Source: Macrostomum lignano
Taxonomy: Eukaryota
Direction of reading: 5' to 3'
Assembly: GCA_002269645.1 (NCBI GenBank)
Contig: NIVC01000984.1
Coordinates: 433,202-497,201 of the forward strand
Length of the DNA stretch: 64,000 nt
Position 1 is the first letter of the stretch. Each line of letters begins with the position of its first letter. The notes beneath the pieces are model-generated. The model was not told the DNA's origin, searched no databases, and saw only the letters and a list, made by a program, of their open reading frames with translations. Below are positions 23,880 to 44,919 of this stretch, in pieces. A program made the position numbers and the translations under genes.

Positions 23880-26800
23880 ATGCTACTGGCAGGGATTTTA
23901 GCACAGCTGCTCCTAGCAACCAATGCGGCGGAACCTGTCGCCGATGACGCGTCTGTCGATGAGCAGATCATCCGGATGCTGAATCTCACCAACGGCGGCT
24001 ATGTCAAAGGCGCCAGTCCGAGACCGATCAATGGCACGGCCGTCGTTGTGACCATCATGATTGAGATAGTCAAGCTCATTGATGTCGTAAGTAGAGCCGG
24101 TTTGTCCGGATTTGCGCTAAATCATCGCATTCTCATTTGTTAATTTATTTGTGCTCTTTACAGGACATGGTCAAGCAGTTCATTGTGCTGGAGAACAGAG
24201 TTTCCATGGTAAGCAGTCTGTTAAACATGCACTGACTCTCATGCCACCTCACTCTCTGACTCTCATGCCAACCACCACCCATGACTCTCGTGCCACCCTC
24301 ACCCCTGACTCTCATGCCACCCTCACCCCTGACTTTCATGCCAACCACCACCCATGACTCTCGTGCCACCCTCACCCCTGACTCTCATGCCACCTCACTC
24401 TCTGACTCTCATGCCAACCACCACCCATGACTCTCGTGCCACCCTCACCCCTGACTCTCATGCCACCCTCACCCCTGACTCTCATGCCAACCACCACCCA
24501 TGACTCTCGTGCCACCCTCACCCCTGACTCTCATGCCACCTCACTCTCTGACTCTCATGCCAACCACCACCCATGACTCTCGTGCCACCCTCACCCCTGA
24601 CTCTCATGCCACCCTCACCCCTGACTCTCATGCCACCTCACTCTCTGACTCTCATGCCACCCTCACCCCTGACTCTCGTGCCACCCTCACAATCCCTGAC
24701 TCTCATGCCACCCTCACCCCTGACTCTCATGCCACCTCACCCCCTGACTCTCATGCCACCCTCACAATCCCTGACTCTCATGCCACCTCACCCCCTGACT
24801 CTCATGCCACCCTCACAATCCCTGACTCTCATGCCACCCTCACAATCCCTGACTCTCATGCCACCCTCACAATCCCTGACTCTCATGCCACCCTCACCCC
24901 TGACTCTTATGCCACCCTCACAATCCCTGACTCTCATGCCACAAGCCTCACTCCCTGACTCTCATGCTACAAGCCTCACCCCTGACTCTCATGCCACAAG
25001 CCTCATCCCCTGACTCTCATGCCACAAACCTCACCCCTGACTCTCATACCACCCTCTCCCCTGACTCTCATGCCACAAACCTCACCCCTGACTCTCATGC
25101 CACAAACCTCACCCCTGACTCTCATACCACCCTCTCCCCCTGACTCTTATGCCACAAACCTCACCCCTGACTCTCATACCACCCTCTCCCCCTGACTCTT
25201 ATGCCACAAACCTCACCCCTGACTCTCATACCACCCTCTCCCCTGACTCTTATGCCACAAACCTCACCCCTGACTCTCATACCACCCTCTCCCCCTGACT
25301 CTTATGCCACAAACCTCACCCCTGACTCTCATACCACCCTCTCCCCCTGACTCTTATGCCACAAACCTCACCCCTGACTCTCATACCACCCTCTCCCCCT
25401 GACTCTTATGCCACAAAGCTCACCCCTGACTCTCATACCACCCTCTCCCCTGACTCTTATGCCACAAAGCTCACCCCTGACTCTCATACCACCCTCTCCC
25501 CCTGACTCCCATGCCAGCCTCACTTCCCAAACACAGCCTTCTCGTTACTTCCAAGCACACATACAAGCATACACCTTCCTCATCGATCTATTTGCATCAA
25601 CCTTGGGACAACCTTCCAACCCGCAGCCTCACTCCAAAGCCAACGTGTTGACTCATCAATCATTTCTGCCACACTGATGTCAATACAACAGAACTGGACA
25701 GACCCCCGACTAGCCTGGAAAGGAATCGCCAGACCGGAACTGGCCGCAGTTGGCGCCATCTACGCGCCTCTGGATTGGCTGTGGACACCTGACATCAGCG
25801 TTAGCCAGCCGTGAGTTTGATAACTATCCTACTTATCTATTTGCTCCGAATGGTGTCTAAAACTGACAGGCTCTGGGCATCCATTAGCAATATTTGACCA
25901 CCCATGCGGCTTGACAGACACTTTAAAGACACTTTACTTTAAAATGGTGCGGCTTATAATTAAATCCACTTTGGAGACTGTGTCAGACATTGGTGGGTGC
26001 CGCTTGTAATTTATGCCATCAACTTTCACACATCGCACGGCTGGGATTCTTTATTGACTTCTTATTCAATACTAATTTTTGTGTTTCTACTCGTATCTTT
26101 ATTTCCGAGTGTTCCTATATCCTTTTCTCATCTGTATTCCTATCCTTATCTCACCTGTATTTATATCCATATCTCACCTGTATTCCTAGCCTTATCTCAC
26201 CTGTATACCTATCCTTATCTCACCTGTATTCCTATCCTTATCTCACCTGTATTCCTATCCTTATCTCACCTGTATTCCTCTCCTTATCTCACCTGTATTC
26301 CTAGCCTTATCTCACCTGTATTCCTATCCATATCTCACCTGTATTCCTCTCCTTATCTCACCTGTATTCCTAGCCTTATCTCGCCTGTATTCCTATCCTT
26401 ATCTCACCTGTATTCCTATCCTTATCTCACCTGTATTTATATCCATATCTCACCTGTATTCCTAGCCTTATCTCACCTGTATACCTATCCTTATCTCACC
26501 TGTATTCCTATCCTTATCTCACCTGTATTCCTATCCATATCTCACCTGTATTCCTCTCCTTATCTCACCTGTATTCCTAGCCTTATCTCACCTGTATTCC
26601 TATCCATATCTCACCTGTATTCCTCTCCTTATCTCACCTGTATTCCTAGCCTTATCTCGCCTGTATTCCTATCCTTATCTCACCTGTATTCCTATCCTTA
26701 TCTCACCTGTATTTATATCCATATCTCACCTGTATTCCTAGCCTTATCTCACCTGTATACCTATCCTTATCTCACCTGTATTCCTATCCTTATCTCACCT

Positions 26801-29158
26801 GTATTCCTATCCATATCTCACCTGTATTCCTCTCCTTATCTCACCTGTATTCCTAGCCTTATCTCACCTGTATTCCTATCCATATCTCACCTGTATTCCT
26901 CTCCTTATCTCACCTGTATTCCTAGCCTTATCTCGCCTGTATTCCTATCCTTATCTCACCTGTATTCCTATCCTTATCTCACCTGTATATTCATATCCTT
27001 ATCTCACCTGTATACCTATCCTTATCTCACCTGTATTCCTATCCTTATCTCACCTGTATTCCTCTCCTTATCTCACCTGTATTCCTATCCATATCTCACC
27101 TGTATTCCTCTCCTTATCTCACCTGTATTCCTAGCCTTATCTCACCTGTATTCCTATCCTTATCTCACCTGTATTCCTATCCTTATCTCACCTGTATTTA
27201 TATCCATATCTCACCTGTATTCCTAGCCTTATCTCACCTGTATACCTATCCTTATCTCACCTGTATTCCTATCCTTATCTCACCTGTATTCCTATCCATA
27301 TCTCACCTGTATTCCTATCCTTATCTCACCTGTATTCCTATCCTTATCTCACCTGTATTCCTAGCCTTATCTCACCTTTATTCCTATCCTTTTTTATCTC
27401 ACCTGTATTCCTAGCCTTATCTCACCTGTATTCCTATCCTTATCTCACCTGTATTCCTATCCTTATCCCACCTGTATTCCTAGCCTTATATCACCTGTAT
27501 TCCTATCCTTATCTCACCTGTATTCCTATCCTTATCTCACCTGTATTCCTAGCCTTATCTCACCTGTATTCCTATCCTTATCTCACCTGTATTCCTAGCC
27601 TTATCTCACCTTTATTCCTATCCTTTTTTATCTCACCTGTATTCCTATCCTTATCTCTCCTGCACTTCTACGAGTATCCTTATTTTCCTTGTGCCCGAAC
27701 TTCACAACCATAGCCTGAACATTTCCAGTGTGGAGATTCGCAACCACGATCAGAGCAAACTGCTAGCCGAGATCAGCTCAGACGGTCAGGTGCAAACCAA
27801 GCTGGCATTCGGCTTAACAAAAAAATGCAACATGCAGCTGGCCAGCTTTCCGTTTGACAAACAGCAGTGCAATTTCAGCATGGCCTCGGGCCAGAGACCG
27901 CCCAATTCGCTGCGGCTCAGAGTGGTGCGAAGCATCGCTATTGACCTATCGATTCGGTTTCTCCGCAGCAACGAGTACTGCGTCACTGCCGTTGACTCGA
28001 TTCTGAAATGGGTCTATTCTAGTTACCACCAGATGGAGGTTATCATTACTTTTAAGGTACAGACTTTTAGTTGACTGACGACTGCATTGTTATAACGCAA
28101 ATATTTTGTTTCAATTTCTGGCCAAATATTTACACTCAACACTCCAGAGACTGCCGATGTACTACGTCATAGTGCTCATCATCCCCAGCGCCCTCATCCT
28201 CGCCACCTGCATCTTCGGCTTTCTCCTGCCAGCGGACTCGGGCGACCGACTGGCACTGAATGTGGCCATCCTGCTGTCAATGAGTGTGTTCCTGCAGCTG
28301 GCGGGCAGCATCACTCCTGCTCAGAGCGAGTCTGTTCCAGTGCTCAGTGAGTCCAAGTGTATGGCTATTGATGTGTGCAGTGCTGTGCTGTGCTGTGCTG
28401 TGGTGTGCTGTGCTGTGCTGTATTGTGCTGTGCTGTGCTGTGCTGTGCTGTGCTGTGCTGTATTGTGCTGTGCTGTGCTGTGCTGTGCTGTGCTGTGCTG
28501 TGCTGTGCTGTGCTGTGCTGTGCTATGCAGCTACACTGAGTCAAGCCTGTCTCTGCCCATCCCCAGCCTGGTACTTCACGGTGGCCATGGCTGTGACCGC
28601 TCTGAGCACAATCGGCAGCATAGTTGTGCACCTGTGCTACAGGAGAGCTGCATCGCGGGAGGCTGTGAGCAACCCAGTGCTGAGGCTGCTGTTCCTCAAC
28701 CGCCTGTGCGGCTGGAAGAACACTGTGGTGAGACGAGCTAAGAGTTCTGCTTGTAAATTTGTTATTTAGCGCATTTTAGATTAATTAGCAGAGATTCTGG
28801 ACTTTTACATGGCAATGGTTCTGACTTCCTAAATCTGATGTGTACTCTGTCTGGAGCTCCTGAGTTCGAGCCCCATGCCTGCCTCTAAATTTTCACCTGA
28901 GCATTTCATTCCGCCCCAAAGCAGGCCGATGACGACTCCGCCTGGGCTGACCAGGTCGGCAAGCAAACGAGCGTCGCCCCAGCAACGACTTCCATGGAAA
29001 CTGCCGAGTGGCGTCAAATCGGTCGCATCATCGATCGGCTGCTGGCCTTCGGCGCGATCGTTGCTTCAGCTGGCATTCTGATCTGTCTGGCTCTCACCGC
29101 GGCGGGGAGCGGCGACTGCGAGCCCGCTTTGAGAAAAATAAGATTTTCTGAATTCTGA
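23880..29158 (+). CDS. nAChR-like Cys-loop ligand-gated ion channel, gene A, 435 aa; exons 23880-24086, 24164-24208, 25692-25810, 27714-28056, 28148-28346, 28567-28727, 28925-29158
   Basis: Signal peptide; WTDPRLAW, WLWTPDI, Cys-loop CNMQLASFPFDKQQC, M1-M2 FLLPADSGDRLAL, M3, M4 EWRQIGRIIDRL; AATAAA at 29303-29308. Confidence 0.9.
24230..25520. repeat. 24-27-bp minisatellite (ctgactctcatgccaccctcaccc)n in gene A intron 2
   Basis: Tandem units whose composition shifts along the array. Confidence 0.95.
26120..27660. repeat. 23-bp minisatellite (atctcacctgtattcctatcctt)n in gene A intron 3
   Basis: About 65 units. Confidence 0.95.
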
Positions 29159-29329
29159 TTCCGGCTCAATCATCGGACACCGTGCCTGATCGCTGACGCC
29201 TGCTTACTGAGCTCCTCTGTTCTATGAAGCTGCATCTTTCTAATAATCCTCTGTCATCGATATTATCTGGATATTTATTAATTTTCCTGATATGCTATAG
29301 GAAATAAACTCTCCCAGTAGTTTTAGGTT

Positions 29330-29745
29330 TGAATCTTAGTGAGTCCTTTAATGGTCCTAGGTTCGAATCCATATGGTTGATCCTATAATAGTCCTAGGTT
29401 CGAATCCATATAGTTGATCCTATAATAGTCCTAGGTTCGAATCCATATAGTTGATCTTATAATAGTCCTAGGTTCGAATCCGTATAGTTGATCCTATAAT
29501 AGTCCTAGTTTTGAATCCATATAGTTGATCCTATAATAGTCCTAGGTTCGAATCCATATAGTTGATCCTATAATAGTCCTAGGTTCGAATCCATATAGTT
29601 GATCCTATAATAGTCCTAGGTTCGAATCCTACTTAGTGAGTTCCAAAATTGTCCTAGGTTCGAATCCTGCTTATTGCATCCTATAATGGTCCTTGGTTCG
29701 AATGCTGCTTACCTCACCTTATCATAGTCTCAGGTTCGAATCCTA
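29330..29745. repeat. 37-bp minisatellite carrying the Pol III B-box consensus GGTTCGAATCC
   Basis: Unit ctataatagtcctaggttcgaatccatatagttgatc; 9 exact GGTTCGAATCC copies and 3 variants. Confidence 0.9.
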
Positions 29746-30489
29746 AAAAAAATGAAGCAGAAGGCCGCCGCAAATCGTGCGGATTTTGTTGCAGGCCGAT
29801 TCCAGCTGCCAACTGCATTGGCAAGATTTGAAGTTTTCAGTTTTTTTAAACATTAAATCCACAACTTTTCAACTACTGGAATTTTGCCATACACATCGGG
29901 AGAAGAGGGAAGTGCGCAAAGATCGCAAGAGTGGCTCTTGAGAAGGAAAGCCGCTCCGATCGCAACGATCGCCCCGAAAAAGAGCCATCTTTGAAACGCA
30001 AACAGCTGACACCTTGAGGCGCGAAGACTTTTGAGTTTCAATGAGCTTCAAACGGACACAGGTCGAGACGAGATTAGCGAGAATTTGGTACTGCCTGGGC
30101 ACTGAATCGGATGTTGTGATGCAGCGCCGACCGCATGAGCATCCGGATTTAACACGCCCGACCATCCCGAAAACGGCGGTGATGTCGGTGTTGAAGGTCA
30201 CGAGCCGATCACAAAAACGGACGATGAAGATGAAAGTATCGATCGCTTCCAGCTTCTTGATGGGAAGGCCCTTAAAAAAGGCGCTGTCGCTGTCGTGATC
30301 GCAGTTGATGTAGAGCCAGCCAGGTGAGTGTCCAGAATATGTCGATTGACTTTTGAGTTGCAACGAGCTTCAAACGGACACAGAGGTCGAGTTATTTTTG
30401 CTCATCCTACAAAATTTATGATCGACATTGCAGAAGTAAAACTAACAAACCTGAGCTGATGTTAGTTTATAGTAATACTAGTGGCCATG

Positions 30490-31005: not shown

Positions 31006-31266
31006 CCAACTGTCTAAAGTCAACAAACTCAGGATGTTTGCGTGCGTGTCTGAGCATTGTTATTATTCGGCAAACAGAACTGCTGGATTAATTACTTAAG
31101 CCCAGCTCAGATGCTGATCAGCCAAATCAAATGAGCCCCCCCTCTCTGTATTTGCGCAATTTTTTATGGAGCCAAACTGTCTGACTGCTTGCTAACTGAT
31201 AACTGGCTATGAATATTAATAGTTTATTCTGCAGCACTGGAGCCCGGAATTAGTCCAGCCTCGCTG

Positions 31267-34200
31267 ATGAAGCCTCCTCGAGCACTGACTCACCGGGCAG
31301 CCGGCCTGCTGCAAATGCTGCTCGCGCTCGCTTGGGTTCTGACTTCGGCCGGGCAATCCAGGAAGTCCAACCAGGAGAGAATTGTCGAGCTGCTGAACCT
31401 CACCTCCGGCTACTGCAAGGGCGCGGCGCCGCCTCCAGACAATGGCACAGCGAATGTTGTCATTGTGTCCATTAAAGTTGTTCGATTGAGCAGCGTGGTG
31501 AGTGCAGCTTGTGCATCTTGTGCTCAACTCTACCTTTGTGTAATAAAGCTGTTGCTGCTGCCATTCAGGATATTGTGAAACAGCAAGTGTCCATTGACCT
31601 CTGGATGATACTGGTAAGCCATCGTTTACATCTCAGTGTGTGCACCTCAGCTCAATCAAATCTCATAGGTATCTCACCTAAATCAACTCTCATAGGTATC
31701 TCACCTAAATCAAATCTCATAGGTATCTCACCTCAACCAAATCTCATATGCATCTCAGCTCAATCGAATTTCATATGCACCTCAGGTCAACCAAATCTCA
31801 TATGCATCTCACCTCAATCAACTCTCATAGGTATCTCACCTCAATCAACTCTCATAGGTATCTCACCTCAACCAAATCTCATAGGTATCTCACCTCAATC
31901 AAATATCATAGGTATCTCACCTCAATCAAATCTCATAGGTATTTCAGCTCAATCAAATCTCATAGGTATCTCGTCTCAATCAAATCTCATATGTATCTCA
32001 GCTCAATCGAATCTCATATGCATCTCAGCTCATTCAAATCTCATATGCATCTCAGCTCAATCAAATCTCATATGCAGTTACGAGCATAGCAATGTGCTAT
32101 TAATAAAAAAATTTATTCAGAGATGGACAGATGCCCGATTAGCCTGGAATGACACAAGCGATGAAAGCTTAGCCAAGGTTGAGAAAATCTTCGTGCCGAC
32201 TGACTGGCTGTGGCTGCCCGATGTGACCGTGGACCACCCGTAAGTACATGCATCATGTAACTGTGTATGTTTATCATGTAGTTGCGTGTGTGTATCATGT
32301 AACTGTTTATGTGTATCATGTAGTTGCGTATGTGTATCATGTAACTGTGTATGTGTATCATTTAGTTGCGTATGTGTATTATGTAACTGTATATGTGTAT
32401 CATGTAGTTGCGTATGTGTATCATGTAGCTGTGTATGTGTATTATTTAACTGTATATGTGTATAATGTAACTAACTGTGGTTGTGTTTTAGAGTTTCGTA
32501 TGAGTAACATGTAGTTCTGTATGTGTTTCATGTAACTGTGTATGTGTATCATGTACCGGTAGTTGCGTATGTGTATCATGTAACTGTTTATGTGTATCAT
32601 GTAGTTGCGGATGTGTATCATGTAACTGTGCATGTATCATGTAGCTGTGCATGTATCATGTAGCTGTGCATGCATCATGTAGTTTTGCATGTATCATGTA
32701 GATGTGCATGTATCATGTAGATGTGCATGTATCATGTAGATGTGCATGTATTATGTAGATGTGCATGTATCATGTAGATGTGCATGTATCATGTAACTTT
32801 AAAAGCAATGCCTTGTCATTGTGGCGAACACAGAGCAATACCTACTCCTGCAACGCAGAGTCGAAATCCGCAATTATGAGGCCAATAAACACTTGTCTAT
32901 TGTCTACCAAAATGGAATTGTAATAATCGGCATTCCATACGGAGTAACCAGCAGGTGTCCGATGAACATGGCGTATTTTCCCTTCGACTCCCAGCAGTGT
33001 AACGCAACCTTCTCCTCGGCTGTGAAAACGCCTGCGGATTTGCAGCTTGAATTGGGACAGGAGGCAAACAAAACCTATGCCGATCTTAACAAGGAGAGCA
33101 ACGAATTCTGCATCAGCCACATTGAAACTTCAAAAGTATCTATCTATGAATATTACGAAAAAGTTCAGGTTTCAATCAGCTTCAAGGCAAGTAGCAGATG
33201 AGTTGAACATCTGTGCTTTACCAGCTGCATCACTCAGCCTCTCACTCCCCACCCCATTGCACAGCAGTCTCTGTGCTAAGTGCCCGCTCAGCCTCCCGCT
33301 CCCCACCCCATTGCACAGCAGTCTCTGTGCTGAGTGCCCGCTCAGCCTCCCGCACCCCACCCCTTTGCAGAGGCGGCCCCTCTACTACATCATCGTGCTC
33401 ATCATCCCCAGCGCCCTCATCCTCGCCACCTGCATCTTCGGCTTTCTCCTGCCAGCGGACTCGGGCGACCGACTGGCACTGAATGTGGCCATCCTGCTGT
33501 CAATGAGTGTGTTCCTGCAGCTGGCGGGCAGCATCACTCCTGCTCAGAGCGAGTCCGTTCCAGTGCTCAGTGAGTCAGAGTGTATGGCTATTGATGTGTG
33601 CTGTGCTGTGCTGTGCTGTGCTGTGCTGTGCTGTGCTGTGCTGTGCTGTGCTGTGCTGTGCTGTGCTGTGCTGTGCTGTGCTGTGCTGTGCTGTGCTGTG
33701 CTGTGCTGTGCTGTGCTGTGCTGTGCTGTGCTGTGCTGTGCTGTGCTGTGCTGTGCTGTGCTGTGCTGTGCTGTGCTGTGCTGTGCTGTGCTGTGCTGTG
33801 CTGTGCTGTGCTGTGCTGTGCTGTGCTGTGCTGTGCTGTGCTGTGCTGTGTTGTGCTGTGCTGTGCTGTGCTGTGCTGTGCTGTACTGTGCTGTGCTGTG
33901 CTGTACTGTGCTGTGCTGTGCTGTGCTGTGCTGTGCTGTGCTGTGCTGTGCTGTGCTGTGCTGTGCTGTGCTGTGCTGTGCTGTGCTGTGCTGTGCTGTG
34001 CTGTACTGTGCTGTGCTGTGCTGTGCAGCTACACTGAGCCAAGCCTGTCTCTGCCCATCCCCAGCCTGGTACTTCACGGTGGCCATGGCTGTGACCGCTC
34101 TGAGCACAATCGGCAGCATAGTTGTGCACCTGTGCTACAGGAGAGCTGCATCGCGGGAGGCTGTGAGCAGCCCAGTGCTGAGGCTGTTGTTCCTCAACCG

Positions 34201-34357
34201 CCTGTGCGGTTTTCAAGGCAGCGACCCCGCGGATGCGTGGCGTCACATCGGCTCTGTAGTGGACCGCCTGCTGATTGCCTGCGCTGTCCTGTCCGCTGCA
34301 GCTGTTGGCGGGCTGCTTGTCGTCACAGCTGCCAATAGCGGCTTTGTAGCTTGCTGA
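31267..34357 (+). CDS. nAChR-like Cys-loop channel, gene B, ~404 aa; exons 31267-31497, 31569-31613, 32121-32239, 32859-33186 (GC donor), 33371-33569, 34065-34357
   Basis: Signal peptide; WTDARLAW, WLWLPDV, CPMNMAYFPFDSQQC, same M1-M3 as gene A, M4 AWRHIGSVVDRL. Confidence 0.88.
31630..32080. repeat. 27-bp minisatellite (ggtatctcacctcaatcaaatctcata)n in gene B intron 2
   Basis: Tandem units. Confidence 0.9.
32250..32800. repeat. AT-rich minisatellite built on tatcatgtag/tatcatgtaa in gene B intron 3
   Basis: Units of ~19-21 bp (gtgtatcatgtagttgcgtat, gtgcatgtatcatgtagat). Confidence 0.9.
33599..34026. repeat. (CTGTG)n pentanucleotide tract in gene B intron 5; homologous tracts at ~28375-28525 (A), ~37919-38150 (C), ~44263-44427 (D)
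   Basis: Direct reading; near-identical flanks in all four paralogs. Confidence 0.97.
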
Positions 34358-34915: not shown

Positions 34916-35066
34916 AGCTATTTATTAATTCAAATATTGTGAGAGCAGCTGTCATTCGAGTCGTAATTTAAACAATAATTTATCGACTCACTTGTATAGT
35001 AAGAATATTGTGTCCCTTCGCAGCTGTCCCAAGGTGTCCCTGTGTAGGTGTAGGTGTCCCAAGCTC

Positions 35067-35650
35067 AACCTCCCGTTCTGTTACCAATGTGTCTGTTTTA
35101 ACCTCCCGGTCTGTTACCAATGTGCTTTTTAACCTCCCGTTCCGTTACCAATGTGCTTTTTAACCTCCCGTTCTGTTACCAATGTGCTTTTTAACCTCCC
35201 GTTCTGTTACCAATGTGCTTTTTAACCTCCCGTTCTGTTACCAATGTGTCTGTTTTAACCTCCCGTTATGTTACCAATGTGTCTGTTTTAACCTCCCGTT
35301 ATGTTACCAATGTGTCTGTTTCAACCTCCCGTTCTGTTACCAATGTGTCTGTTTCAACCTCCCGTTCTGTTACCAATGTGTCTGTTTCAACCTCCCGTTC
35401 TGTTACCAATGTGTCTGTTTCAACCTCCCGTTCTGTTACCAATGTGTCTGTTTCAACCTCCCGTTCTGTTACCAATGTGTCTGTTTTAACCTCCCGTTAT
35501 GTTACCAATGTGTTTTTTAACCTCCCGTTCTGTTACCAATGTGTTTTTTAACCTCCCGTTATGTTACCAATGTGTCTGTTTCAACCTCCCGTTCTGTTAC
35601 CAATGTGCTTTTTAACCTCCCGTTCTGTTACCAATGTGCTTTTTAACCAA
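35067..35650. repeat. 31/33-bp minisatellite (aacctcccgttctgttaccaatgtgtctgtttc)n
   Basis: Tandem units; ends in an inverted part-unit cattggtaaca (~35659-35669). Confidence 0.9.
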
Positions 35651-36130
35651 AAAAAACGCATTGGTAACAAAAAAGCTACACTGAGCCAAGCCTGTCTCCG
35701 CCCATTCCGTGTCTGTCGCAACCTCCAATTTTTATCAGTACCAATAATGGACCTTTGATTAACGAGCCTTTAATGGACTTAGTGTCTATTGTAGCAAAAA
35801 GTTTGCTCAGCAGCCATTTTCTGGTCAACGCAAATTCGCAAATTTGCATTACGACGAGTAAATTGGGTGTGATTGGTGGCTAAAAAGGCAGAGGATAATG
35901 CTGAAAGCAAACAATGCTTGCCAGTCCATCAAATTGACTTAGACGATAACCTATTTACGGGATGCTATCCCAGCTGCATTCTAGTCAATTAGAGAGCGGG
36001 GAGTTGTCAGAATCTAATTCAGCAATTTCCCAAAGTGGTTCTCCCCTGTGGGAAATATTAAACGAATAAAACCATCGGGGGATTCGGTGTCGATAGCCGG
36101 ATTAGCACAGCTGAATTCAGCCAGCGAGCA

Positions 36131-38650
36131 ATGCTGAGACAGGGGATTATTCTGGCGTTGACATTGACGTTGCTAGCCCACGAGGCCGCCGTCTGCTCGG
36201 CGAAGGAGCCTTCCAGGATGTCAACCGAAGAGAGGATCATCCGGCTGCTGAACATCACCTCCGGCTACTACAAGGTGGCGGCACCTCCGCCAGACAACGG
36301 CACGGCCAATGTAATCAAGTTTAGAACTAAACTCATCAGAATCAGCAGCGTGGTGAGTGCCGCTGAGGGTGCAGTATTGTATATCGTATTTTAACTCCCC
36401 AAACTTACAGGTTTTTGCTCAAACTTTTACTCAAAAATGCGATAGCCACTGTAATCGGTTTAAAAGCAGTTAAATCAGTCTGAAAAAACGCTTTGTAGGA
36501 TGTTGTGAATCAGCTAGTGTCCTTGGATCTCTGGATAATGATGGTGAGTTTGACTCCTAGATAATCCACCTTTAAGTTACCTGAATGAGTAGCAGCTGCA
36601 CATCTACCGCAACACCTGCCTCGGCCGCCCTCGAACAACTCTGAATTTTCAGTTTTGGACAGATTCGCGACTCGCCTGGAACGAGACCGACGATCCCAAA
36701 CTGGCCAAGTTTGAGAAGATCTTTCTACCAACAGACTATGTGTGGCTTCCGGACTTGAGTCTGAGCCATCCGTGAGTTCTGTTTGCCAATTTAATATGGC
36801 ATTGATTTTTATATTGGTTGATAATAAAGCCGATCAGGTGGAGAGTCCCCTTTCGCTGCAGCCTATCAAAAAAGCCTATCAAAGCCACTGCCACAGAGCT
36901 GCACTCGGCCATAGACAATAAAGCCAACCAAAGCCACTGCCACAGAGCTGCACTCGGCCATAGACAATAAAGCCAACCAAAGCCACTGCCACAGAACTGC
37001 ACTCGGCCATAGACAATAAAGCCTATCAAAGCCACTGCCACAGAGCTGCACTCGGCCATAGACAATAAAGCCAACCAAAGCCACTGCCACAGAGCTGCAC
37101 TCGGCCATAGACAATAAAGCCAACCAAAGCCACTGCCACAGAGCTGCACTCGGCCATAGACAATAAAGCCAACCAAAGCCAATGCCACAGAACTGCACTC
37201 GGCCATAGACAGTCCAGTCTTTTATCAAATACTCTCGTAAATATTTTGACAGGGTTGACGTCAAAAGCTTTGAAACCAACAAATTCTTGGTTGACGTGAG
37301 CTCGAACGGTAGGATGAAACTGGAAACGCCGCTCGGCATAACCATCAAGTGCCCGCTGAAGATGCGCGACTTTCCATTTGACACGCAAGTTTGCCAGTTT
37401 TCTTTCTCGTCAGCGGCGAAGAAGCAGACGCTTTTGCAGCTTGAGATAAAAAGTGGGCTGCCTATCAACTACAGCGAGATAAACCTGCAGAACAATGAGT
37501 ACTGTGTTACTAGCGTGCGCTCAGTCATTATTGACTTCAGCACCCAATTTCCCCAATTCAAGAAGCTTTTGGTTACAGTTGAATTCGAGGTAAAATACCG
37601 CATGTTTGAGAGGTGCTGGGTACTCACTCATTGCACAGCAGTCTCTGTTCTGACTACCCGCTCAGCCTCCCGCTCCCCATCCCATTGCAGAGGCGGCCCC
37701 TCTACTACGTCATCGTGCTCATCATCCCCAGCGCCCTCATCCTCGCCACCTGCATCTTCGGCTTTCTCCTGCCAGCGGACTCGGGCGACCGACTGGCACT
37801 GAATGTGGCCATCCTGCTGTCAATGAGTGTGTTCCTGCAGCTGGCGGGCAGCATCACTCCTGCTCAGAGCGAGTCTGTTCCAGTGCTCAGTGAGTCCAAG
37901 TGTATGGCTATTGATGTGTGCTGTGCTGTGCTGTGCTGTGCTGTGCTGTGCTGTGCTGTACTGTGCTGTGCTGTGCTGTGCTGTGCTGTGCTGTGCTGTA
38001 CTGTGCTGTATTGTGCTGTGCTGTACTGTGCTGTGCTGTGCTGTGCTGTGCTGTGCTGTGCTGTGCTGTGCTGTATTGTGCTGTGCTGTGCTGTGCTGTG
38101 CTGTGCTGTGCTGTGCTGTGCTGTGCTGTGCTGTGCTGTGCTGTGCTGTGCAGCTACACTGAGTCAAGTCTGTCTCTGCCCATCCATAGCCTGGTACTTC
38201 ACGGTGGCCATGGCTGTGACCGCTCTGAGCACAATCGGCAGCATAGTTGTGCACCTGTGCTACAGGAGAGCTGCATCGCGGGAGGCTGTGAGCAACCCGG
38301 CGCTGAGGCTGCTGTTCCTCAACCGCCTGTGCGGCTGGTCGGTGCGTGCTCTCTCATATGTACTTAGATTTTCCGACGTTGGTCTTACTTTATCTGCTGA
38401 CAGCTTGTCGAATCTTTAAATTGCTCTCATTTTTCGCCAGAATTACCGAGTCAGCAGCGCCACATCGAAGGCCGCGGCCGCCTCATCATCCAGCAGCAGC
38501 CTCGCCAGCGTCCAGGACGGCTGCCGCGATCCTGGAGACGAGTGGCTGCATGTGAGCTGCGTGCTGGACAGACTGATGCTGGTCTGCGTTGTGAGCCTCT
38601 CCGTGGCCGTCACCGTGTTGCTGGGCGCCACCGCTAACAAGAGCAACTAG
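36131..38650 (+). CDS. nAChR-like Cys-loop channel, gene C, 427 aa; exons 36131-36352, 36499-36543, 36653-36771, 37253-37589, 37691-37889, 38190-38341, 38441-38650
   Basis: Signal peptide; WTDSRLAW, YVWLPDL, CPLKMRDFPFDTQVC, shared M1-M3, M4 EWLHVSCVLDRL; AATAAA at 38711-38716. Confidence 0.9.
36860..37212. repeat. 49-bp minisatellite in gene C intron 3
   Basis: Unit gccatagacaataaagccaaccaaagccactgccacagagctgcactcg, about 7 copies. Confidence 0.92.
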
Positions 38651-40086
38651 GCGGGGTGCTGATGACCGAGCTCATCAATTCGAGTTTAAGGACTACTAAA
38701 CTAACTCCTTAATAAACTAATACATCAGCTGTGTACCGTGCAATACTCCAGCAGCCAACACTAGCAGCTAATTATTGAACCAATAGGTCAGTTAACCAAA
38801 CTGCCGCAGCAGATATATATTACAACTATATTTTATCTTGTTAAACTATAATAATCATTTTGACGCATTGCACTTGTTTCAAGGCAACTGAAGACTGAAT
38901 CTTTCGGACTGATGTAGTTACCTCCGGAGTTGAGGGCATCGTGGGTTTTACTTGTACCTATATTAGTGAAAAACATTAGCTTCAGAATTCTTCATTCGAT
39001 TAGATTTTACGATACTGATATTGTCAAGGTTTAGCTTTCCGTGTGTCTATTACATGTAAGTGCAGTGAGTTTGAGAAGGGAGCTTTTTAAAATGAAGATG
39101 GTACTGAGTCGGAAGTATAAATGGTTTCATTAACTCCACAGTCAGAGCACGAAAGAAGCCAGACGCGAACACCTACAAGGGATCGCCAGGGACTTCTAGA
39201 GCTGGCACCACAGTAATGCTATTTTTAGCAGTCCCTGCAAACAGACAAAGGGGAGGCAAATCAACGCGAGAAGAAGGCCTTAAAGCCAGATCGGGGGGAG
39301 GTGGGTGCGCCAGAGAGACGGAGACGGGGCGCGACGGAGGCCGGAGAGAAAGAACATCCGACCGGTCACAAACCACACCGTAAGCGTCACGCACTCTTAC
39401 GGATAATATTTGATGAACAGCTAGAGTTGACAAATTGGACAATTGCATGACAATACGGCCGGGGCACTGGCTAGGTGGCTGGAAGCAAACAATTGAGTAG
39501 CACTTAAGCAAATTGATTCGGTGCATCAGTGACGAAGAGAGCCGAGTCAATAGAATCTAATTAGGCAACTCTGAACAATATCCAATAGTTGAAGCAACTC
39601 AGAAAACTAACTGTTCTTCTCGGAATCAAACCCATGTGTCTGACGGACGACAGCACGAAAGTTTATAAGCTGCACGGACTCTCATTAATTAAAGTTTGAG
39701 TCGCCGAATTGAAGTGGCGCGCAGCTGAACTCACTCTAGTCTGCTTCAAGTTGAGTACCTTGGACGCTGCCAAGTACATATACGGATTACGCACTCGCTC
39801 ACACTGGGTGTACAGCGGCCCTGACTTTCTCATCCGTTAGGCAGTGAACTGCAAGGGCACCGGAAAGTTCACTTTCTCGAAAAATGTTGCCATGGTCACT
39901 TCGCTTGCTCACAGCTTAAACAAATTCAACTCTGAAGCTTCCCAGCGATAGCTTCTACTAATTCAATATTTGAGCACCATGCTAACCCGGCCCTTTGTGT
40001 GCTCTGCTCAGTGCTTGGTTTAACTGTCGTGACTGTTAATTAAAGCCTTGCAGTCGCTGAGCAAAGTGAGTCGGGGAAACGGCAGG

Positions 40087-40197
40087 CCAATATGCCACCA
40101 ACTGCTTTATCAGCGTCGCATTCACTCAGCTCAGCAATCGCAATCAGCTTATTGGTTATAGCAAAAGGCTGCATTTGCTCTAGTATGTATATATAAG
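40087..40197 (+). promoter_or_regulatory. Candidate CCAAT/TATA core promoter of gene D
   Basis: ccaat at 40087, attgg at 40151, tatatataag at ~40188-40197, about 120 nt before the ATG at 40317. Confidence 0.35.
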
Positions 40198-40316
40198 AGG
40201 CTTGTCTACATCAGTTCATGCTCTGCTTACTTAGTTTGGTGAACTGCTAGCAGTCTGGCGCTGTGATACTTGGCAAATACTGCTGTGTGAGCCTGCGCTC
40301 CTACCCGAATAGATCG

Positions 40317-43300
40317 ATGCGGACTCAACAATACTCAGACCTCTGCTGCAGACTCTGCGTAGCAGTGCTCGTCTTGCTGTCATCAGGAGTGCATTCTCAA
40401 ACAGAAGAAGCGGCATCTGGAGAGGAGCAGGTGATCCGATGGCTGAACCTGACCGCCAGGTACTGCAAGGAGGCGGCTCCGCCGCAGGACAATGGCACCG
40501 CTACCTTGGTTACTGTGGACTGCCTTGTCAACGAGCTGCTTGAAGTGGTGAGTTGGCACCAGTAAATACCATAGATGTCCAAAAATAGTGATGTAGCGCT
40601 AGCGCTAATTCAATTAACCCCTGTCCGATAACGATGCTCCATCTTGTGCTGTTCCAGAATGATGTGAAGCAGTTGTTTTCTCTTGACAGCTACATAATGC
40701 TGGTAAGCTTGATGAGTTATTAGAAATATTGATGTTACATTCATGCTGAAAAAAACCTTTGTAACTCTTCCGCCCCCAAGCAATGGACTGACAGGAGACT
40801 GGCCTGGGACAGGTCGGGCAATGCTGAGCTGCTGACAACTGACGAAATCTTCCTGCCACTCGACATGATTTGGGTGCCGGATGTCATTGTGATGAGGCCG
40901 TGAGTGCGACATCAGATTTCAGTTTATTAGCTCCATAGCTCAAGTGCAAAAGTTGCTCTTATCTTCTCTTCTCGTCCGGGATCGCGTCTCAAACTCCTCG
41001 AAATCCCACAGCTCCACGTTGGATGAAGGAGCGAACCATTGCAAAATCCGTTCAGACGGCACAACTGGCCAATCACCAGATTCGCTCCTGATAAAAATTG
41101 ATTCAAAATTAGTCGATACTACTGAATTGCCAACAATCGAAAGTAGTATTCAGCAAGGACTACTAAAGTAGAAGGACATGGTAGAACTACGGAGATCACG
41201 CCTCCCCTGAAGAGAGAATTCGGTCGATACAATATGCCCTGAAAACTACTGATTTCCCATGAATCCATGACCCAGCAGAAGTCCAAAAAAGCAATCCTAG
41301 AAATCCTATCGCATTGTCTGCACAGTGTACAGGTATGCAAAATATTAGTGACTTTAGTTGATATCGGTATAGAATGAAACTAATCCATTCTGCCAGAGCC
41401 TCAGAAGTTGGCCTTTCATGGCTGAGTATCGCCTCAGGCCAATCGCACGGAATCGAACCAACTATACATGCATACATTTTTCGCAAGAGGCAGCTGCTCA
41501 GCCTCTCAATTGCTTCATCAGTTGTTTACTATTAAAGTGCAGCCGAGCTCCGGCAGCCCGTCTCCACTCTGTCCAGCTCTCGGCCGCAGCAATTCGCTGC
41601 ATTTTGCATTCCTGCCACCTGCAGCCAGCAGCAACAGACAGGCTTGAGCACGCACTGAATGGCCTGAGAGCCATCGAATTATGATATGCGAGCATGGTCA
41701 CAATGGCTTTTTAAGACAAAACGCAGTCGAGCTGTAGGCAGCGGGTGGTTAGAGAGGCCAGCTTAACCTCTCTGTATCTCTGCTCGCTCGCTATTCTCAG
41801 GCCAGCTCACCGCTCTGTCAGCCTCCCTGCAGTTTGGCAGACTCCGGGGGCAACCAGCAGTGCTGTACTCGGTCTGTTTTGAGTAGTGAGCTGAATGGAG
41901 CTGCATTCTAGCTAGACTTATTTATTATCTCAGGCAGGAGTTGCGGGGGTTGGGTGGTTCGAGAGGCCAGTATGGGGTGATTGCGAACTCGAGTAGTTTT
42001 CTCTTTGCGGGCTTTTATGACGCCAGACTGTCGCACTGCGAGTGCTGAGCTGGGTGGGGCCGTTCCAGATGAAGCTTGGAGATTCATTTAGCGATGAGGC
42101 TGCTGAGATGACCAGCGCAAAGCTGAGCTGTCTGAGGCTGCAGTGGCAGCTGCTCCCGAAAGAGTTGCAGCCCCAGCCTTGCACAATGGAGACTCTGCAT
42201 TGTGCTTTAGCACCCTGCCTGCCCCCTCACTGCACCTTCGCTTCTGTGCTCAGAGATGACGGGCGGAGGCTGGGCTGCCAGCCAGCTGCATTTTTTTGAT
42301 AGTTTAGCGCTTTCTCGAAGCATGAGAAAACAAGCGTTTATTGAGCGGAGTCTGCATGATCTGAGCTGGGATCTGATAGAGAACAAAGAAGCTGAGCTTT
42401 CGAGTTGACAAATCTCAGCAGTGAAATGCTGAAGTGTCGGTCACCAAGTGCAAAATGCAATAAAAAAGCCAGGCAGCCGCAGTGCACAGATAAACCGTGT
42501 GAAATCCAAAATCAGCCTATATGTGAGTCCCGCACTGTCCTGGGCAGGCCGAGAGCTGGACAGAATAGAGACGGGCTGCCAGAGCTCGGCTGCACTTTAA
42601 TAATAAACAACTGATGAAGCAATTGAGAGGCTGAGCAGCTGCCTCTTGCGAAAAATGTATGCATGTATAGTTGGTTCGATTCCGTGCGATTGGCCTGAGG
42701 CGATACTCAGCCATGAAAGGCCAACTTCTGAGGCTCTGGCAGAATGGATTAGTTTCATTCTATACCGATATCAACTAAAGTCACTAATATTTTGCATACC
42801 TGTACACTGTGCAGACAATGCGATAGGATTTCTAGGATTGCTTTTTTGGACTTCTGCTGGGTCATGGATTCATGGGAAATCAGTAGTTTTCAGGGCATAT
42901 TGTATCGACCGAATTCTCTCTTCAGGGGAGGCGTGAGATAGGAAGTTCTCTTTTTTCAGCATAAAAATTGTTATTGCTTTCGATAGGAGGCAGACGCAAT
43001 GCTCATCTTTGGATAAGATCTCTATTGATATTCGTAAAGCTCTTTGTTCGGAAAATTGGGATTCTATGTTAATTTCATATTCTACGTACATTTCCTGTAC
43101 CTAAAAAATCATTAAAATGCATGGCACGGCTCGAATCTTTAGTTTTAGCTCGTATGCATCTATTTTATCATTTCTGTTACACATATTGTTACACAGTAAG
43201 CCAAGGACAACTCAAAGATGAGCATTGGGTCTGCCTCCTATTGAAAGCAATAACAATTTTTGAGCTGAAAAAATGAAAACTTTCTATCTACATAGTGTAT

Positions 43301-44919
43301 TTCTCGGCGAACAGTGGCCTTCAAAACATTTTGTATAGATTTAGCTCGTACAGTGTCGCGTCCTGTACGTTGCTTTAGTTGTCCGTGGTATTCAGTATTA
43401 GAAATATTTGGTGTTTTTGCGGCTTATAATTCAAACCTCTGACTGGTACTTTACTTATAATGATAAGTAAAAAGATATGAAGCGATGTATCTTTCATGAT
43501 CTTTGGCTGGCTACTAACTCAAATATGATTCACTAAAGCTTATAAAAAAGTATACGATGATTATTGCACTTTTGACACCAACTCACTTAAAAGCTACTCA
43601 ACCTCTCTCATAGCATCGACATTCGCAGCTTCGAGAAGAACAGGCTGCTAGCGAAGGTGCTCGCGAATGGCCAGGTCACGGCACTGCTGTCCTACGGCAC
43701 AACCAACAAGTGCAAGATGAAGCTGAACGATTTCCCGTTCGACTCCCAGCACTGCTCAATCTACCTGTCCTCGGTAGCGAAGGGTAGTAAATACATCAGG
43801 CTGAAGGCTTTACCAAGACCCAATGACCAGCAGATTGTCGTGACTGCTAGCCAAAATAATGAATTCTGCGTCACCAATGTCAATACATCCTGGAATAGTA
43901 AGATGGGACAACACGACATAGTGAATATCACTGTCAGCTTCAAGGTGAGATAGAAACTAGATACTCGTATATAAAGGTCCCCGAGGCTCGGCATTAAGTG
44001 CCCGCTCAGTCTCCCGCTCCCCATCCCTTTGCAGAGGCGGCCCCTCTACTACGTCATCGTGCTCATCATCCCCAGCGCCCTCATCCTCGCCACCTGCATC
44101 TTCGGCTTTCTCCTGCCAGCGGACTCGGGCGACCGACTGGCACTGAATGTGGCCATCCTGCTGTCAATGAGTGTGTTCCTGCAGCTGGCGGGCAGCATCA
44201 CCCCTGCTCAGAGCGAGTCTGTTCCAGTGCTCAGTGAGTCAGAGTGTATGGCTATTGATGTGTGCTGTGCTGTGCTGTGCTGTGCTGTGCTGTGCTGTGC
44301 TGTGCTGTGTTGTGCTGTGCTGTGCTGTGCTGTGCTGTGCTGTGCTGTACTGTGCTGTATTGTGCTGTGCTGTGCTGTGCTGTGCTGTGCTGTATTGTGC
44401 TGTGCTGTGCTGTGCTGTGCTGTGCTATGCAGCTACACTGAGCCAAGTCTGTCTCTGCCCATCCCCAGCCTGGTACTTCACGGTGGCCATGGCTGTGACC
44501 GCTCTGAGCACAATCGGCAGCATAGTTGTGCACCTGTGCTACAGGAGAGCTGCATCGCGGGAGGCTGTGAGCAGCCCAGTGCTGAGGCTGCTGTTCCTCA
44601 ACCGCCTGTGCGGCTGGAAGAACACTGTGGTGAGCATAAAGTTCTGAGTCTTTAATAACTCACTCGGATGCAGTTAGCAACTGTCGCACAATTTTTGCAG
44701 CAAAGCGTTGAGAACTGCAAGGAGAGCAACCAAGCCCAATCGCTCGAGTCGGTTTCCATGACAACAATCAAAACCAGTCCGGGATCCGAGTGGCAGCAGA
44801 TTGGCTCAGCGATTGACCGCCTGCTGATAATCTGCTCCGTCAGCTGCTCTGTGGCCGTCTTGCTGCTGATTTTTGTCACCGCGGTCAAGAACGCTTCTAG
44901 CTGGTGTCCAACGTATTAG
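40317..44919 (+). CDS. nAChR-like Cys-loop channel, gene D, 434 aa; exons 40317-40547, 40658-40702, 40781-40899, 43614-43944, 44035-44233, 44469-44629, 44701-44919
   Basis: Signal peptide; WTDRRLAW, MIWVPDV, CKMKLNDFPFDSQHC, shared M1-M3, M4 EWQQIGSAIDRL. Confidence 0.9.
41197..42935. mobile_element. Non-autonomous foldback DNA transposon with 389-bp TIRs (41197-41585, 42547-42935), CAC..GTG ends, 4-bp TSD AGAT; Chapaev/CMC-like
   Basis: Arms are near-perfect reverse complements (about 4 mismatches seen); agat at 41193-41196 and 42936-42939; no transposase recognised inside. Confidence 0.78.
42936..43297. mobile_element. Older MITE with ~85-bp imperfect TIRs, interrupted by the foldback element (left tip at ~41185-41196)
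   Basis: 42936-43011 is the reverse complement of 43213-~43288; the match continues left of the foldback (aactacggagat vs cactatgtagat). Confidence 0.6.

What the first reader, a model, noticed from the sequence alone, without database searches (positions are those of the whole stretch)
23880..44919. Variable-sensor / constant-pore receptor array: four nAChR-like genes with a homogenised M1-M3 module
Seen: exons 1-4 and M4 are very different among A-D (exon 2: DMVKQFIVLENRVSM, DIVKQQVSIDLWMIL, DVVNQLVSLDLWIMM, NDVKQLFSLDSYIML; four different Cys-loops). Exon 5 (199 nt) differs by only 1-3 nt among B, C and D by eye, and near-identity spans synonymous sites, both flanks of intron 5 and exon 6. 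Tract edges differ by gene: A joins ~12 nt into exon 5; B, C and D share the end of intron 4; A and D share through the exon-6 donor; B leaves at ~34208 and C at ~38338. Diagnostic sites are mosaic (gtccaag in A,C vs gtcagag in B,D; caagcc in A,B vs caagtc in C,D). Known: intron plus synonymous identity with mosaic sites is the signature of gene conversion, as in constant domains of other tandem families. Inference: old paralogs keep diversified ligand-binding domains while the pore/assembly module is repeatedly homogenised, which could let subunits co-assemble combinatorially on a uniform channel. I know of no description of this in Cys-loop receptors but cannot search.
Basis: partly seen in the sequence, partly recalled or inferred. 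Interest (0 to 1): 0.92.

Follow-up and report, generated by a model that had tools for sequence, protein, structure and literature searches.

The report
Gene conversion homogenises flatworm receptor pores
Four neighbouring, anciently diverged ion-channel receptor genes of the flatworm Macrostomum lignano share a nearly identical membrane-pore segment because short stretches of DNA are repeatedly copied from one gene to another, a well-known process not previously reported for this receptor family.

Summary
Window 23880-44919 holds four intact, same-strand Cys-loop receptor genes (A-D; 404-434 aa). The window is the last 64 kb of Macrostomum lignano contig NIVC01000984.1.

Extracellular-domain exons 1-4 are 35-46% identical in protein, with saturated synonymous divergence (dS 1.4 or more). 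The M4 exon is 22-44% identical. Exon 5, intron 5 and about 145 nt of exon 6 (M1-M3) differ by 4-11 of 385 core positions. Four-fold degenerate sites differ at 1-2 of about 64 in the module against 53-62% in the extracellular domain.

Two further contigs of the same assembly hold B, C and D again. In one (L002), gene C's module carries the gene-B base at all 12 positions where window-C and window-B differ, while both flanks stay C-type. That is a discrete B-to-C conversion tract.

Recurrent short-tract interlocus gene conversion is therefore strongly supported. These are orphan receptors closest to alpha-7 and 5-HT3A that lack most of the ACh-binding aromatic residues.

This is a new example of a known kind of process. 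Interest is moderate.

The parts
23880..29158 (+). Gene A, 431 aa. Exons 23880-24086, 24164-24208, 25692-25810, 27729-28056, 28148-28346, 28567-28727, 28922-29158.
   Evidence: Complete ORF with canonical splice sites. Pfam LBD 2.7e-26 and TM 2.1e-17. UniRef M. lignano models P0004 and P0005 match it.
31267..34357 (+). Gene B, 404 aa. Exons 31267-31497, 31569-31613, 32121-32239, 32859-33186 (GC donor), 33371-33569, 34065-34357. Exon 6 runs without an intron into M4.
   Evidence: The ORF and the GC donor are conserved in L002.
36131..38650 (+). Gene C, 427 aa. Exons 36131-36352, 36499-36543, 36653-36771, 37253-37589, 37691-37889, 38190-38341, 38441-38650.
   Evidence: Closest solved structures are alpha-7 nAChR and 5-HT3A, E about 1e-41. 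UniRef P0002 is a C-like model.
40317..44919 (+). Gene D, 434 aa. Exons 40317-40547, 40658-40702, 40781-40899, 43614-43944, 44035-44233, 44469-44629, 44701-44919.
   Evidence: P0153 (NCBI PAA50078.1, PAA53391.1 and PAA73977.1; BOX15_Mlig024351, 434 aa as my model) is annotated at exactly this span, L001 10001-14603 = window 40317-44919; I did not compare its sequence with my model residue by residue.
28172..28732 (+). Homogenised tract in A: exon 5 nt 25 through intron 5 to just past the exon-6 donor.
   Evidence: A-D 95% over 603 nt including microsatellite gaps. Core differences 5-6 of 385.
33309..34209 (+). Homogenised tract in B: last 62 nt of intron 4, exon 5, intron 5 and exon 6 nt 1-145.
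   Evidence: (family D17).
37629..38338 (+). Homogenised tract in C: last 62 nt of intron 4, exon 5, intron 5 and exon 6 nt 1-149.
   Evidence: In L002 this tract is replaced by B-type sequence.
43997..44634 (+). Homogenised tract in D: last ~38 nt of intron 4, exon 5, intron 5, exon 6 and its donor.
28374..28528 (+). (TGTGC)n microsatellite in intron 5 of A, 31 units.
33597..34026 (+). (TGTGC)n microsatellite in intron 5 of B, 86 units (about 75 in L003, about 44 in L002).
37917..38151 (+). (TGTGC)n microsatellite in intron 5 of C, 47 units (about 46 in L003, about 120 in L002).
44261..44430 (+). (TGTGC)n microsatellite in intron 5 of D, 34 units in all three locus copies.
33233..33369 (+). 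2.5 tandem copies of a 54-nt unit in B intron 4. The unit contains the intron-4 end shared with C and D.
   Evidence: (family D20).

Best explanation
This is a tandem array of four old paralogous genes for cation-type Cys-loop (pentameric ligand-gated) channel subunits in Macrostomum lignano.

One block of about 450 nt, plus an unstable (TGTGC)n microsatellite, is kept 97-99% identical among the genes. The block comprises the end of intron 4, exon 5 (M1-M2), intron 5 and most of exon 6 (M3 and the post-M3 helix). The cause is recurrent, short-tract, non-reciprocal copying between neighbouring genes, i.e. interlocus gene conversion during repair or recombination.

Shown:
- Identity extends to synonymous and intronic sites and has sharp edges that differ by gene pair.
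- The flanks are saturated with divergence.
- The tract and the flanks give conflicting groupings.
- One assembled copy of the locus carries a discrete B-to-C tract.

Inferred:
- Tracts are confined because only this block still has enough identity to pair, which is self-reinforcing. Exchange of M1-M3 is also harmless, whereas exchange of the diverged extracellular domain or M4 either cannot start or is selected against.
- More tentatively (about 0.3), breaks or stalled replication at the central microsatellite start the events.

The ligand is unknown. These are orphan subunits and probably do not bind ACh in the canonical way.
For: Divergence contrast:
- Extracellular domain: 35-46% aa identity, pS 0.63-0.77, dS 1.4 or more.
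- Exon 5: dS 0.02-0.09.
- M4 exon: 22-44% aa identity.
- Four-fold sites differ at 1-2 of about 64 in the module against 53-62% in the extracellular domain, p 6e-10 or lower.

Non-coding identity: both flanks of intron 5 and the end of intron 4 are shared. Other introns and spacers share nothing comparable.

Conflicting groupings: the extracellular domain and M4 pair B with C. The module splits AC|BD at four sites, with AB|CD and AD|BC at one each.

Independent copies of the locus: contigs NIVC01003722.1 (L002) and NIVC01003094.1 (L003) carry B, C and D again.
- L002-C differs from window-C at 13 of 385 core positions but from window-B at only 2.
- It carries the B-private bases exon-5 19A, exon-5 186C and exon-6 123T.
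- Intron 4 positions -41 to -6 and exon 6 from nt 146 stay C-type.
- Background exon divergence between these copies is 0.1-1%.
- All ORFs are intact in L002.

The copies are distinct: microsatellite lengths and interruption patterns differ.

GC3 is 0.77-0.82 in exons 5 and 6 (0.68 for B's exon 6, which is fused to M4) against 0.54-0.80 in exons 1-4, and 0.54-0.70 in the large exon 4.

Proteins predicted from what appear to be other, error-prone gene models keep the A-specific exon-5 start and the C-private exon-6 bases.
Against: - All three DNA copies come from one assembly (GCA_002269645.1). No raw reads were available, so short-read mis-polishing between near-identical modules cannot be formally excluded.
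- Mosaic evidence within the window rests on about six informative sites, and one of them sits at the edge of the microsatellite.
- A GENECONV-style permutation on polymorphic sites was significant only for A-D and B-D. It has little power here because all four copies are homogenised together.
- The GC3 rise is modest and could reflect codon use in transmembrane segments.
- The role of the microsatellite is only suggested by its central position. The tract also simply fills the whole block of residual homology.
Confidence: 0.9

Rival explanations
1. Adaptive constant pore (the reader's reading, an addition to conversion rather than an alternative). Selection favours identical M1-M3 in all four subunits so that different sensor domains can co-assemble on one uniform channel, and converted alleles are therefore kept.
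For: - The homogenised block coincides with the pore-forming helices, while the ligand-binding domain and M4 stay diverse.
- All four genes are intact in the window, and B, C and D are intact in the L002 copy too.
- Only 2-7 amino-acid differences occur across exons 5 and 6 between any pair.
Against: - There is no expression, co-expression or assembly evidence.
- Tract edges differ by gene pair and fall inside exon 5 or inside the post-M3 region, not at domain borders.
- M4 and the cytoplasmic loop are not shared.
- Apparently tandem relatives have M1-M3 only 48-72% identical.
- Intron and synonymous identity needs no selection on the protein.
- From general knowledge of pentameric channels, subunit assembly depends largely on extracellular-domain interfaces.
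Confidence: 0.15
2. Assembly or polishing artefact. The modules really differ between genes, and consensus building or short-read polishing made them alike.
For: - The genome is highly repetitive and partly duplicated. Tandem-repeat arrays are listed all along the window.
- All the DNA comes from one assembly.
Against: - Each module keeps private SNPs and its own microsatellite length and interruption pattern.
- The same gene-specific bases recur in three contigs.
- The same gene-specific residues appear in UniRef proteins that look like separate, error-prone gene models.
- An artefact in L002-C would need two switches within about 1 kb while also leaving four private changes and a 120-unit microsatellite.
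Confidence: 0.03
3. No conversion. Either the duplication was recent and the extracellular domain then diverged very fast, or purifying selection on the pore is simply extreme.
For: M1-M3 is the most conserved part of Cys-loop receptors in general (alignment to alpha-7).
Against: - Synonymous sites of the extracellular domain are saturated, and introns 1-4 and 6 do not align. The duplications are therefore old.
- Selection on protein cannot hold four-fold sites and intron flanks identical.
- The B-type module inside C-type flanks in L002 cannot be explained this way.
Confidence: 0.01

Closest known systems
Regional gene conversion in clustered protocadherin genes (fugu, zebrafish, human; Yu et al. 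2007, PMC1852091, which cites Noonan et al. 2004)
   Same: - Tandem paralogs of a neuronal membrane-receptor family.
- The N-terminal recognition region stays diverse, while a membrane-proximal region is more than 99% identical at the nucleotide level, synonymous sites included.
- GC3 is raised in the converted part, and the pattern is specific to certain clusters.
   Different: - There the tract lies inside one large variable exon and involves up to dozens of genes.
- Here it spans two exons and an intron with a microsatellite in four genes of a ligand-gated channel family.
- Here a tract that differs between copies of the locus is seen directly.
Human fetal gamma-globin genes HBG1/HBG2: conversion tract ending at a (TG)n simple repeat in intron 2 (Slightom, Blechl and Smithies 1980; recalled from my own knowledge, not checked here)
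   Same: Short-tract conversion between tandem paralogs that covers exons and an intron, associated with a TG-rich simple repeat proposed to be a recombination hot spot.
   Different: - The globin pair is young and similar along its whole length.
- Here the flanks are saturated with divergence.
- Here the repeat sits in the middle of the tract, not at its edge.
Lineage-specific expansions of nAChR-type genes in lophotrochozoans (Jiao et al. 2019, PMC6896357)
   Same: Many divergent nAChR-like subunit genes arranged in tandem in spiralian genomes, often lacking the canonical ligand-binding residues.
   Different: That paper contains no mention of gene conversion or of flatworms. It describes birth and divergence of genes, not homogenisation of part of the gene.
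Arrays of variable first exons with shared constant exons (UGT1A, protocadherin constant exons; PMC1885805, seen only in the hit list)
   Same: The outcome for the protein is alike: a variable N-terminal recognition part joined to a constant C-terminal part.
   Different: Those arrays reach it by splicing to one physical copy of the constant exons. Here each gene has its own copy, kept alike by DNA copying, and the C-terminal M4 is not constant.

Membership tests
Cys-loop pentameric ligand-gated ion channel subunit | Pfam Neur_chan_LBD followed by Neur_chan_memb | tested here: met
   All four proteins hit both: LBD 2.7e-26 to 2.3e-33, TM 4e-16 to 3.8e-18, all above the gathering scores.
Cys-loop pentameric ligand-gated ion channel subunit | Cys-loop (C-x13-C with an FPFD core) and four transmembrane segments M1-M4 | tested here: met
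   The loops read CNMQLASFPFDKQQC, CPMNMAYFPFDSQQC, CPLKMRDFPFDTQVC and CKMKLNDFPFDSQHC. M1-M3 lie in exons 5 and 6, and M4 follows the W..(I/V)..(I/V/L)DRL motif in the last exon.
Cation-selective branch (nAChR / 5-HT3 type) | Closest relatives are cationic receptors; acidic residue at M2 -1' and Leu at 9' | tested here: met
   The best solved relatives are alpha-7 nAChR and 5-HT3A, E 1e-41. M2 reads PADSGDRLALNVAILLSMSVF and aligns to alpha-7 [21 protein letters not shown], giving Asp at -1' and Leu at 9' (alignment). Ion selectivity itself was not measured.
Acetylcholine-gated nicotinic receptor proper | Aromatic box: loop A Tyr, loop B Trp, loop C Tyr-x-Cys-Cys...Tyr, loop D Trp | tested here: not met
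   In the alignment to alpha-7 and the four-way alignment:
- The loop B Trp position is Ala or Val (FSSAA, FSSAV, MASGQ, LSSVA).
- There is no vicinal Cys pair, and loop C is about 10 residues shorter.
- The loop A Tyr position is Gln, His, His and Arg in A, B, C and D.
- Only B and C keep the loop D Trp (LWMIL, LWIMM).
The genes should be filed as orphan nAChR-like subunits.
Interlocus (ectopic) gene conversion / regional concerted evolution | A bounded tract of paralog identity that includes synonymous and intronic sites, with diverged flanks on both sides | tested here: met
Interlocus (ectopic) gene conversion / regional concerted evolution | Conflicting relationships between tract and flanks, and mosaic (four-gamete-incompatible) sites within the tract | tested here: met
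   The flanks pair B with C, while the tract gives AC|BD at four sites and AB|CD and AD|BC at one each. Site numbers are small.
Interlocus (ectopic) gene conversion / regional concerted evolution | Comparison of copies of the same locus shows one gene's tract replaced by a paralog's sequence | tested here: met
   In L002, gene C has the B base at 12 of 12 B/C-diagnostic positions, with C-type flanks on both sides. It is 2 differences from B and 13 from its own counterpart.
Interlocus (ectopic) gene conversion / regional concerted evolution | GC3 raised in the converted region (GC-biased conversion) | tested here: inconclusive
   GC3 is 0.77-0.82 in exons 5 and 6 (0.68 for B's exon 6, which is fused to M4) against 0.54-0.80 in exons 1-4. 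C's M4 exon is 0.83.
Interlocus (ectopic) gene conversion / regional concerted evolution | Confirmation at the level of single reads or in a population | not testable with these tools
   No raw reads or resequencing data were available.

The most novel reading that the evidence does not exclude
The block is a self-homogenising cassette. An unstable (TGTGC)n microsatellite in the intron between the M2 and M3 exons acts as a built-in initiator of conversion. Selection keeps the resulting uniform M1-M3 pore, so four or more different sensor domains feed one channel design and can form combinatorial heteromers. This would be a DNA-level route to the 'variable head, constant body' architecture that protocadherins and UGT1A reach by splicing.
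Probability: 0.12. Interest if true: 0.75.

Novelty: new member of a known kind. Interest (0 to 1): 0.45.

Why it matters
For evolutionary genetics this is a clean and unusually direct example of domain-restricted concerted evolution. The flanks are saturated, the tract edges are sharp, and a conversion tract differs between assembled copies of the same locus.

For the ion-channel field it is, as far as five full-text searches show, the first such case in Cys-loop receptors. It carries a practical warning: trees of expanded spiralian nAChR-like families built on the conserved transmembrane region can be misleading, and these regions should be analysed separately.

The array is also a natural chimera series, with four very different extracellular domains on one pore. 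That could make it easier to assign ligands to orphan subunits by heterologous expression.

It does not reveal a new kind of mechanism.

Tried and rejected
- **GENECONV-style permutation.** Longest runs of matches at polymorphic sites were significant only for A-D (p 1e-4) and B-D (p 0.004). The test is blind when all copies are homogenised together, so I used four-fold-site contrasts and the comparison of locus copies instead.
- **Module peptide search.** The word-indexed protein database returned only one fragment. The exhaustive representative search showed no near-identical module outside A, C and D type proteins. The next best M1-M2 hits are about 56% identical or less.
- **Contig look-ups.**
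  - The look-ups for P0001 and P0005 found nothing.
  - The last homolog search returned no further gene-A model, only the UniRef clusters already seen. Gene A could therefore not be examined in the other two contigs.
- **Rfam scan of the whole window.** No hits, so there is no evidence that the conserved intron flanks hold a known RNA.
- **Purifying selection alone, or recent duplication.** Rejected.
- **Unequal crossing-over producing chimeric genes.** Rejected because both the 5' and 3' flanks stay gene-specific, so the tracts are internal.
- **Mariner-like ORF at 49126-49563 (-).** It looked like a transposase by eye but has no Pfam hit. I make no claim about it.
Full report
**What is there.** The interval 23880-44919 runs from the start codon of the first of four same-strand genes to the stop codon of the last.
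- I built exon models by reading the splice junctions. A, C and D have seven exons. B has six, because its exon 6 runs straight into M4.
- All give complete ORFs of 431, 404, 427 and 434 aa with AG acceptors and GT donors. The one exception is a GC donor after B exon 4, which is conserved in another copy of the locus.
- Each protein hits Pfam Neur_chan_LBD and Neur_chan_memb well above threshold and has a C-x13-C Cys-loop with an FPFD core.
- No further family member lies elsewhere in the window.

**Source of the window.**
- The closest database proteins are Macrostomum lignano predictions.
- P0153 (NCBI PAA50078.1, PAA53391.1 and PAA73977.1; BOX15_Mlig024351, 434 aa like my gene-D model) is annotated at exactly the gene-D span.
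- The window is an exact match to the last 64 kb of contig NIVC01000984.1 of assembly GCA_002269645.1. Window position equals contig position minus 433201.

**Checking the observation.**
- Exon 5 is 199 nt in all genes and differs by 2, 3 and 1 nt among B, C and D.
- A differs at exon-5 nt 3, 5, 9, 10, 12 and 24 and is identical afterwards.
- B and C share the last 62 nt of intron 4; D shares about 38 nt.
- A and D remain identical through the exon-6 donor. B leaves after 34209 and C after 38338.
- Intron 5 consists of a 27-nt 5' flank, a (TGTGC)n microsatellite of 31, 86, 47 and 34 units, and a 38-nt 3' flank. This microsatellite occurs nowhere else in the window.
- Over a 385-nt core (exon 5 from nt 25, both intron flanks, exon 6 nt 1-145) the four genes differ by only 4-11 positions.

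**Contrast with the rest of the genes.**
- Exons 1-4 are 35-46% identical in protein, with pS 0.63-0.77 and dS 1.4 or more, which is saturation.
- The M4 exon is 22-44% identical in protein.
- Four-fold degenerate sites differ at 1-2 of 63-65 in the module and at 53-62% in the extracellular domain, Fisher p 6e-10 to 2e-13.
- Unit-against-unit BLAST finds no other comparably similar segment. The exceptions are a 75%-identical B-C stretch across the exon-1/intron-1 boundary, two short, weak B-D matches (the better one within exon 1), a 44-nt match between spacer sequence after gene A and before gene B, and a 35-nt orphan fragment.

Neither chance, nor purifying selection on the protein, nor a recent duplication can produce this pattern.

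**Evidence for exchange within the window.** The extracellular domain and M4 pair B with C. The module splits AC|BD at four positions, AB|CD at one and AD|BC at one. All three partitions cannot fit one tree. The number of sites is small, and one sits at the edge of the microsatellite. Taken alone this is suggestive, not strong.

**The decisive addition.** Gene D's product is annotated on three contigs of the same assembly. Fetching them gave the window itself (L001) and two further copies of the array: L002 (NIVC01003722.1, about 97-98.5% identical) and L003 (NIVC01003094.1, about 99.4%). Both contain B, C and D. Whether these are alleles or copies from the species' genome duplication cannot be told here.
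- All modules in L003, and D's module in L002, are identical to those of the window.
- In L002, gene C differs from window-C at 16 positions of the module. At 12 of these it carries exactly the base of gene B.
- Those 12 are every position at which window-B and window-C differ. They include the B-private bases exon-5 19A, exon-5 186C and exon-6 123T.
- The six diagnostic intron-4 positions (-41 to -6) and exon 6 from nt 146 onwards stay C-type.
- In the 385-nt core, L002-C is 2 differences from window-B and 13 from window-C. Exons elsewhere differ by only 0.1-1% between these copies.

This is a discrete B-to-C conversion tract of about 970-1016 nt including the microsatellite, or about 390 nt without it. 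It arose after the copies of the locus diverged. L002-B has C at exon-6 nt 123, where window-B and L002-C have T, which hints at yet another small event. All reading frames and splice sites are intact in L002.

**Artefact check.**
- The modules keep private SNPs and distinct microsatellite lengths and interruption patterns.
- The same gene-specific bases recur across three contigs.
- UniRef proteins that look like separate, frameshifted gene models still show the A-specific exon-5 start (RLPMYY, read in a shifted frame in P0004 and directly in P0005). They also show the C-private exon-6 bases (P0002).
- All the DNA nevertheless comes from one assembly and no reads were available. I leave about 3% for a polishing artefact.

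**How it most likely works.** The genes are old duplicates. M1-M3 is the slowest-evolving part of such receptors, so it stayed similar enough for repair or recombination intermediates to form between neighbours. Each conversion restores identity and so keeps the block competent for the next one. The extracellular domain, the other introns and M4 have diverged too far to pair. Tract ends vary by gene pair and fall inside exon 5, inside intron 4 or in the post-M3 region. This fits stochastic tract ends limited by homology better than selection at domain borders.

The microsatellite lies in the middle of the block, with arms of about 200-290 nt. It is visibly unstable between copies of the locus (B about 86, 75 and 44 units; C about 47, 46 and 120 units). 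It is a plausible initiation site, as was proposed for the (TG)n repeat in the fetal globin genes (my recollection, not checked). But the tract also simply fills the available homology, so I give this step only about 0.3.

GC3 is somewhat higher in the module: 0.77-0.82 (0.68 for B's exon 6, which is fused to M4) against 0.54-0.80 in exons 1-4. This is compatible with GC-biased conversion but not conclusive.

**What the receptors are.** By sequence they sit closest to alpha-7 nAChR and 5-HT3A, E about 1e-41.
- M2 has Asp at -1' and Leu at 9', which predicts a cation channel.
- Most of the aromatic box of ACh-binding sites is missing. There is no loop-B Trp, no loop-C Cys pair, a loop C about 10 residues shorter and no loop-A Tyr. 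Only B and C keep the loop-D Trp.
- They should be called orphan nAChR-like subunits with unknown ligand.

**The functional reading.** The idea that a uniform pore lets variable sensors co-assemble is not tested by anything here.
- The best non-identical hits in an exhaustive search of 1.84 billion representatives are long fused models, P0006 and P0007. Each contains three gene units of the same subfamily and is presumably a neighbouring array; the source organism is not given.
- Their M1-M3 modules are only 48-72% identical in protein. A uniform pore is therefore not a general property of such arrays.

I rate the adaptive version at about 0.15, as an addition to conversion and not an alternative to it.

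**Comparison with what is known.** Domain-restricted conversion in tandem families is well established. The closest parallel is the clustered protocadherins. There the 3' part of the variable exons is more than 99% identical among paralogs, synonymous sites included, and GC3 is raised, while EC1-EC3 stay diverse (PMC1852091).

Five full-text searches found no description of the process in this receptor family. The searches combined 'gene conversion' or 'concerted evolution' with nicotinic, Cys-loop, ligand-gated or pentameric channels, or with Macrostomum lignano. A sixth search, pairing Macrostomum with nicotinic receptors, also turned up nothing relevant. The main paper on spiralian nAChR expansions mentions neither conversion nor flatworms. 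The library does not cover subscription journals, so absence is not proof.

**Verdict.**
- The gene-conversion interpretation is strongly supported and extended by a directly observed tract.
- The adaptive design interpretation is unsupported.
- This is a new member of a known kind of process and is of moderate interest.

Noticed in passing
window 35674-35708: A fifth, orphan copy of the 35-nt segment that lies just 3' of the intron-5 microsatellite (AGCTACACTGAGCCAAGCCTGTCTC...). It sits in the B-C spacer directly after an unrelated 33-nt-unit minisatellite (35067-35648). No coding remnant lies beside it. It could be a relic of a lost gene copy or of an ectopic repair event.
   Followed up: partly
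window 41183-42949 (intron 3 of gene D): An element of about 1.77 kb with 403-nt terminal inverted repeats that are 98% complementary. It coincides with the 41197-42934 gap in the alignments of both L002 and L003 to the window. It is probably a recently inserted foldback or long-TIR DNA transposon that is polymorphic between copies of the locus.
   Followed up: partly
window 34065-34357 (gene B): Gene B has lost intron 6 and most of the M3-M4 loop. Exon 6 reads straight into M4, leaving about 33 residues between M3 and M4. B exon 4 also uses a GC donor (GCAAGT), which is conserved in L002.
   Followed up: partly
window 33233-33369: The 3' end of B intron 4, which includes the stretch shared with C and D, is tandemly repeated 2.5 times with a 54-nt unit. 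This creates extra acceptor-like ...ttgcacag sites upstream of exon 5.
   Followed up: no
whole window: Tandem-repeat arrays with units of 9-117 nt are listed all along the window, including inside introns 2 and 3 of the receptor genes. The window ends exactly at the end of contig NIVC01000984.1.
   Followed up: no
public annotation of genes A-D: My searches recovered an NCBI protein only for gene D. The word-indexed searches scored only the top 8000 candidates, so this is not exhaustive. The UniRef model P0001 of gene D lacks the 45-nt exon 2. The UniRef models of A (P0004) and C (P0002) are frameshifted. No protein model of gene B was found at all.
   Followed up: partly
window 10447-11373 (-) and about 3144-9334 (+): Neighbouring genes: a Ras/Rab-family small GTPase ORF (Pfam Ras, 4e-53) on the minus strand, and a multi-exon plus-strand gene with an ANAPC5-like domain (E 6.7e-06).
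   Followed up: partly
L002 3023-3315 and 7008-8025: In L002, gene B has C at exon-6 nt 123, while L002 gene C carries the B-type T there. L002-B also has a private synonymous T at exon-6 nt 11. This suggests a further small exchange or a polymorphism after the B-to-C event.
   Followed up: no
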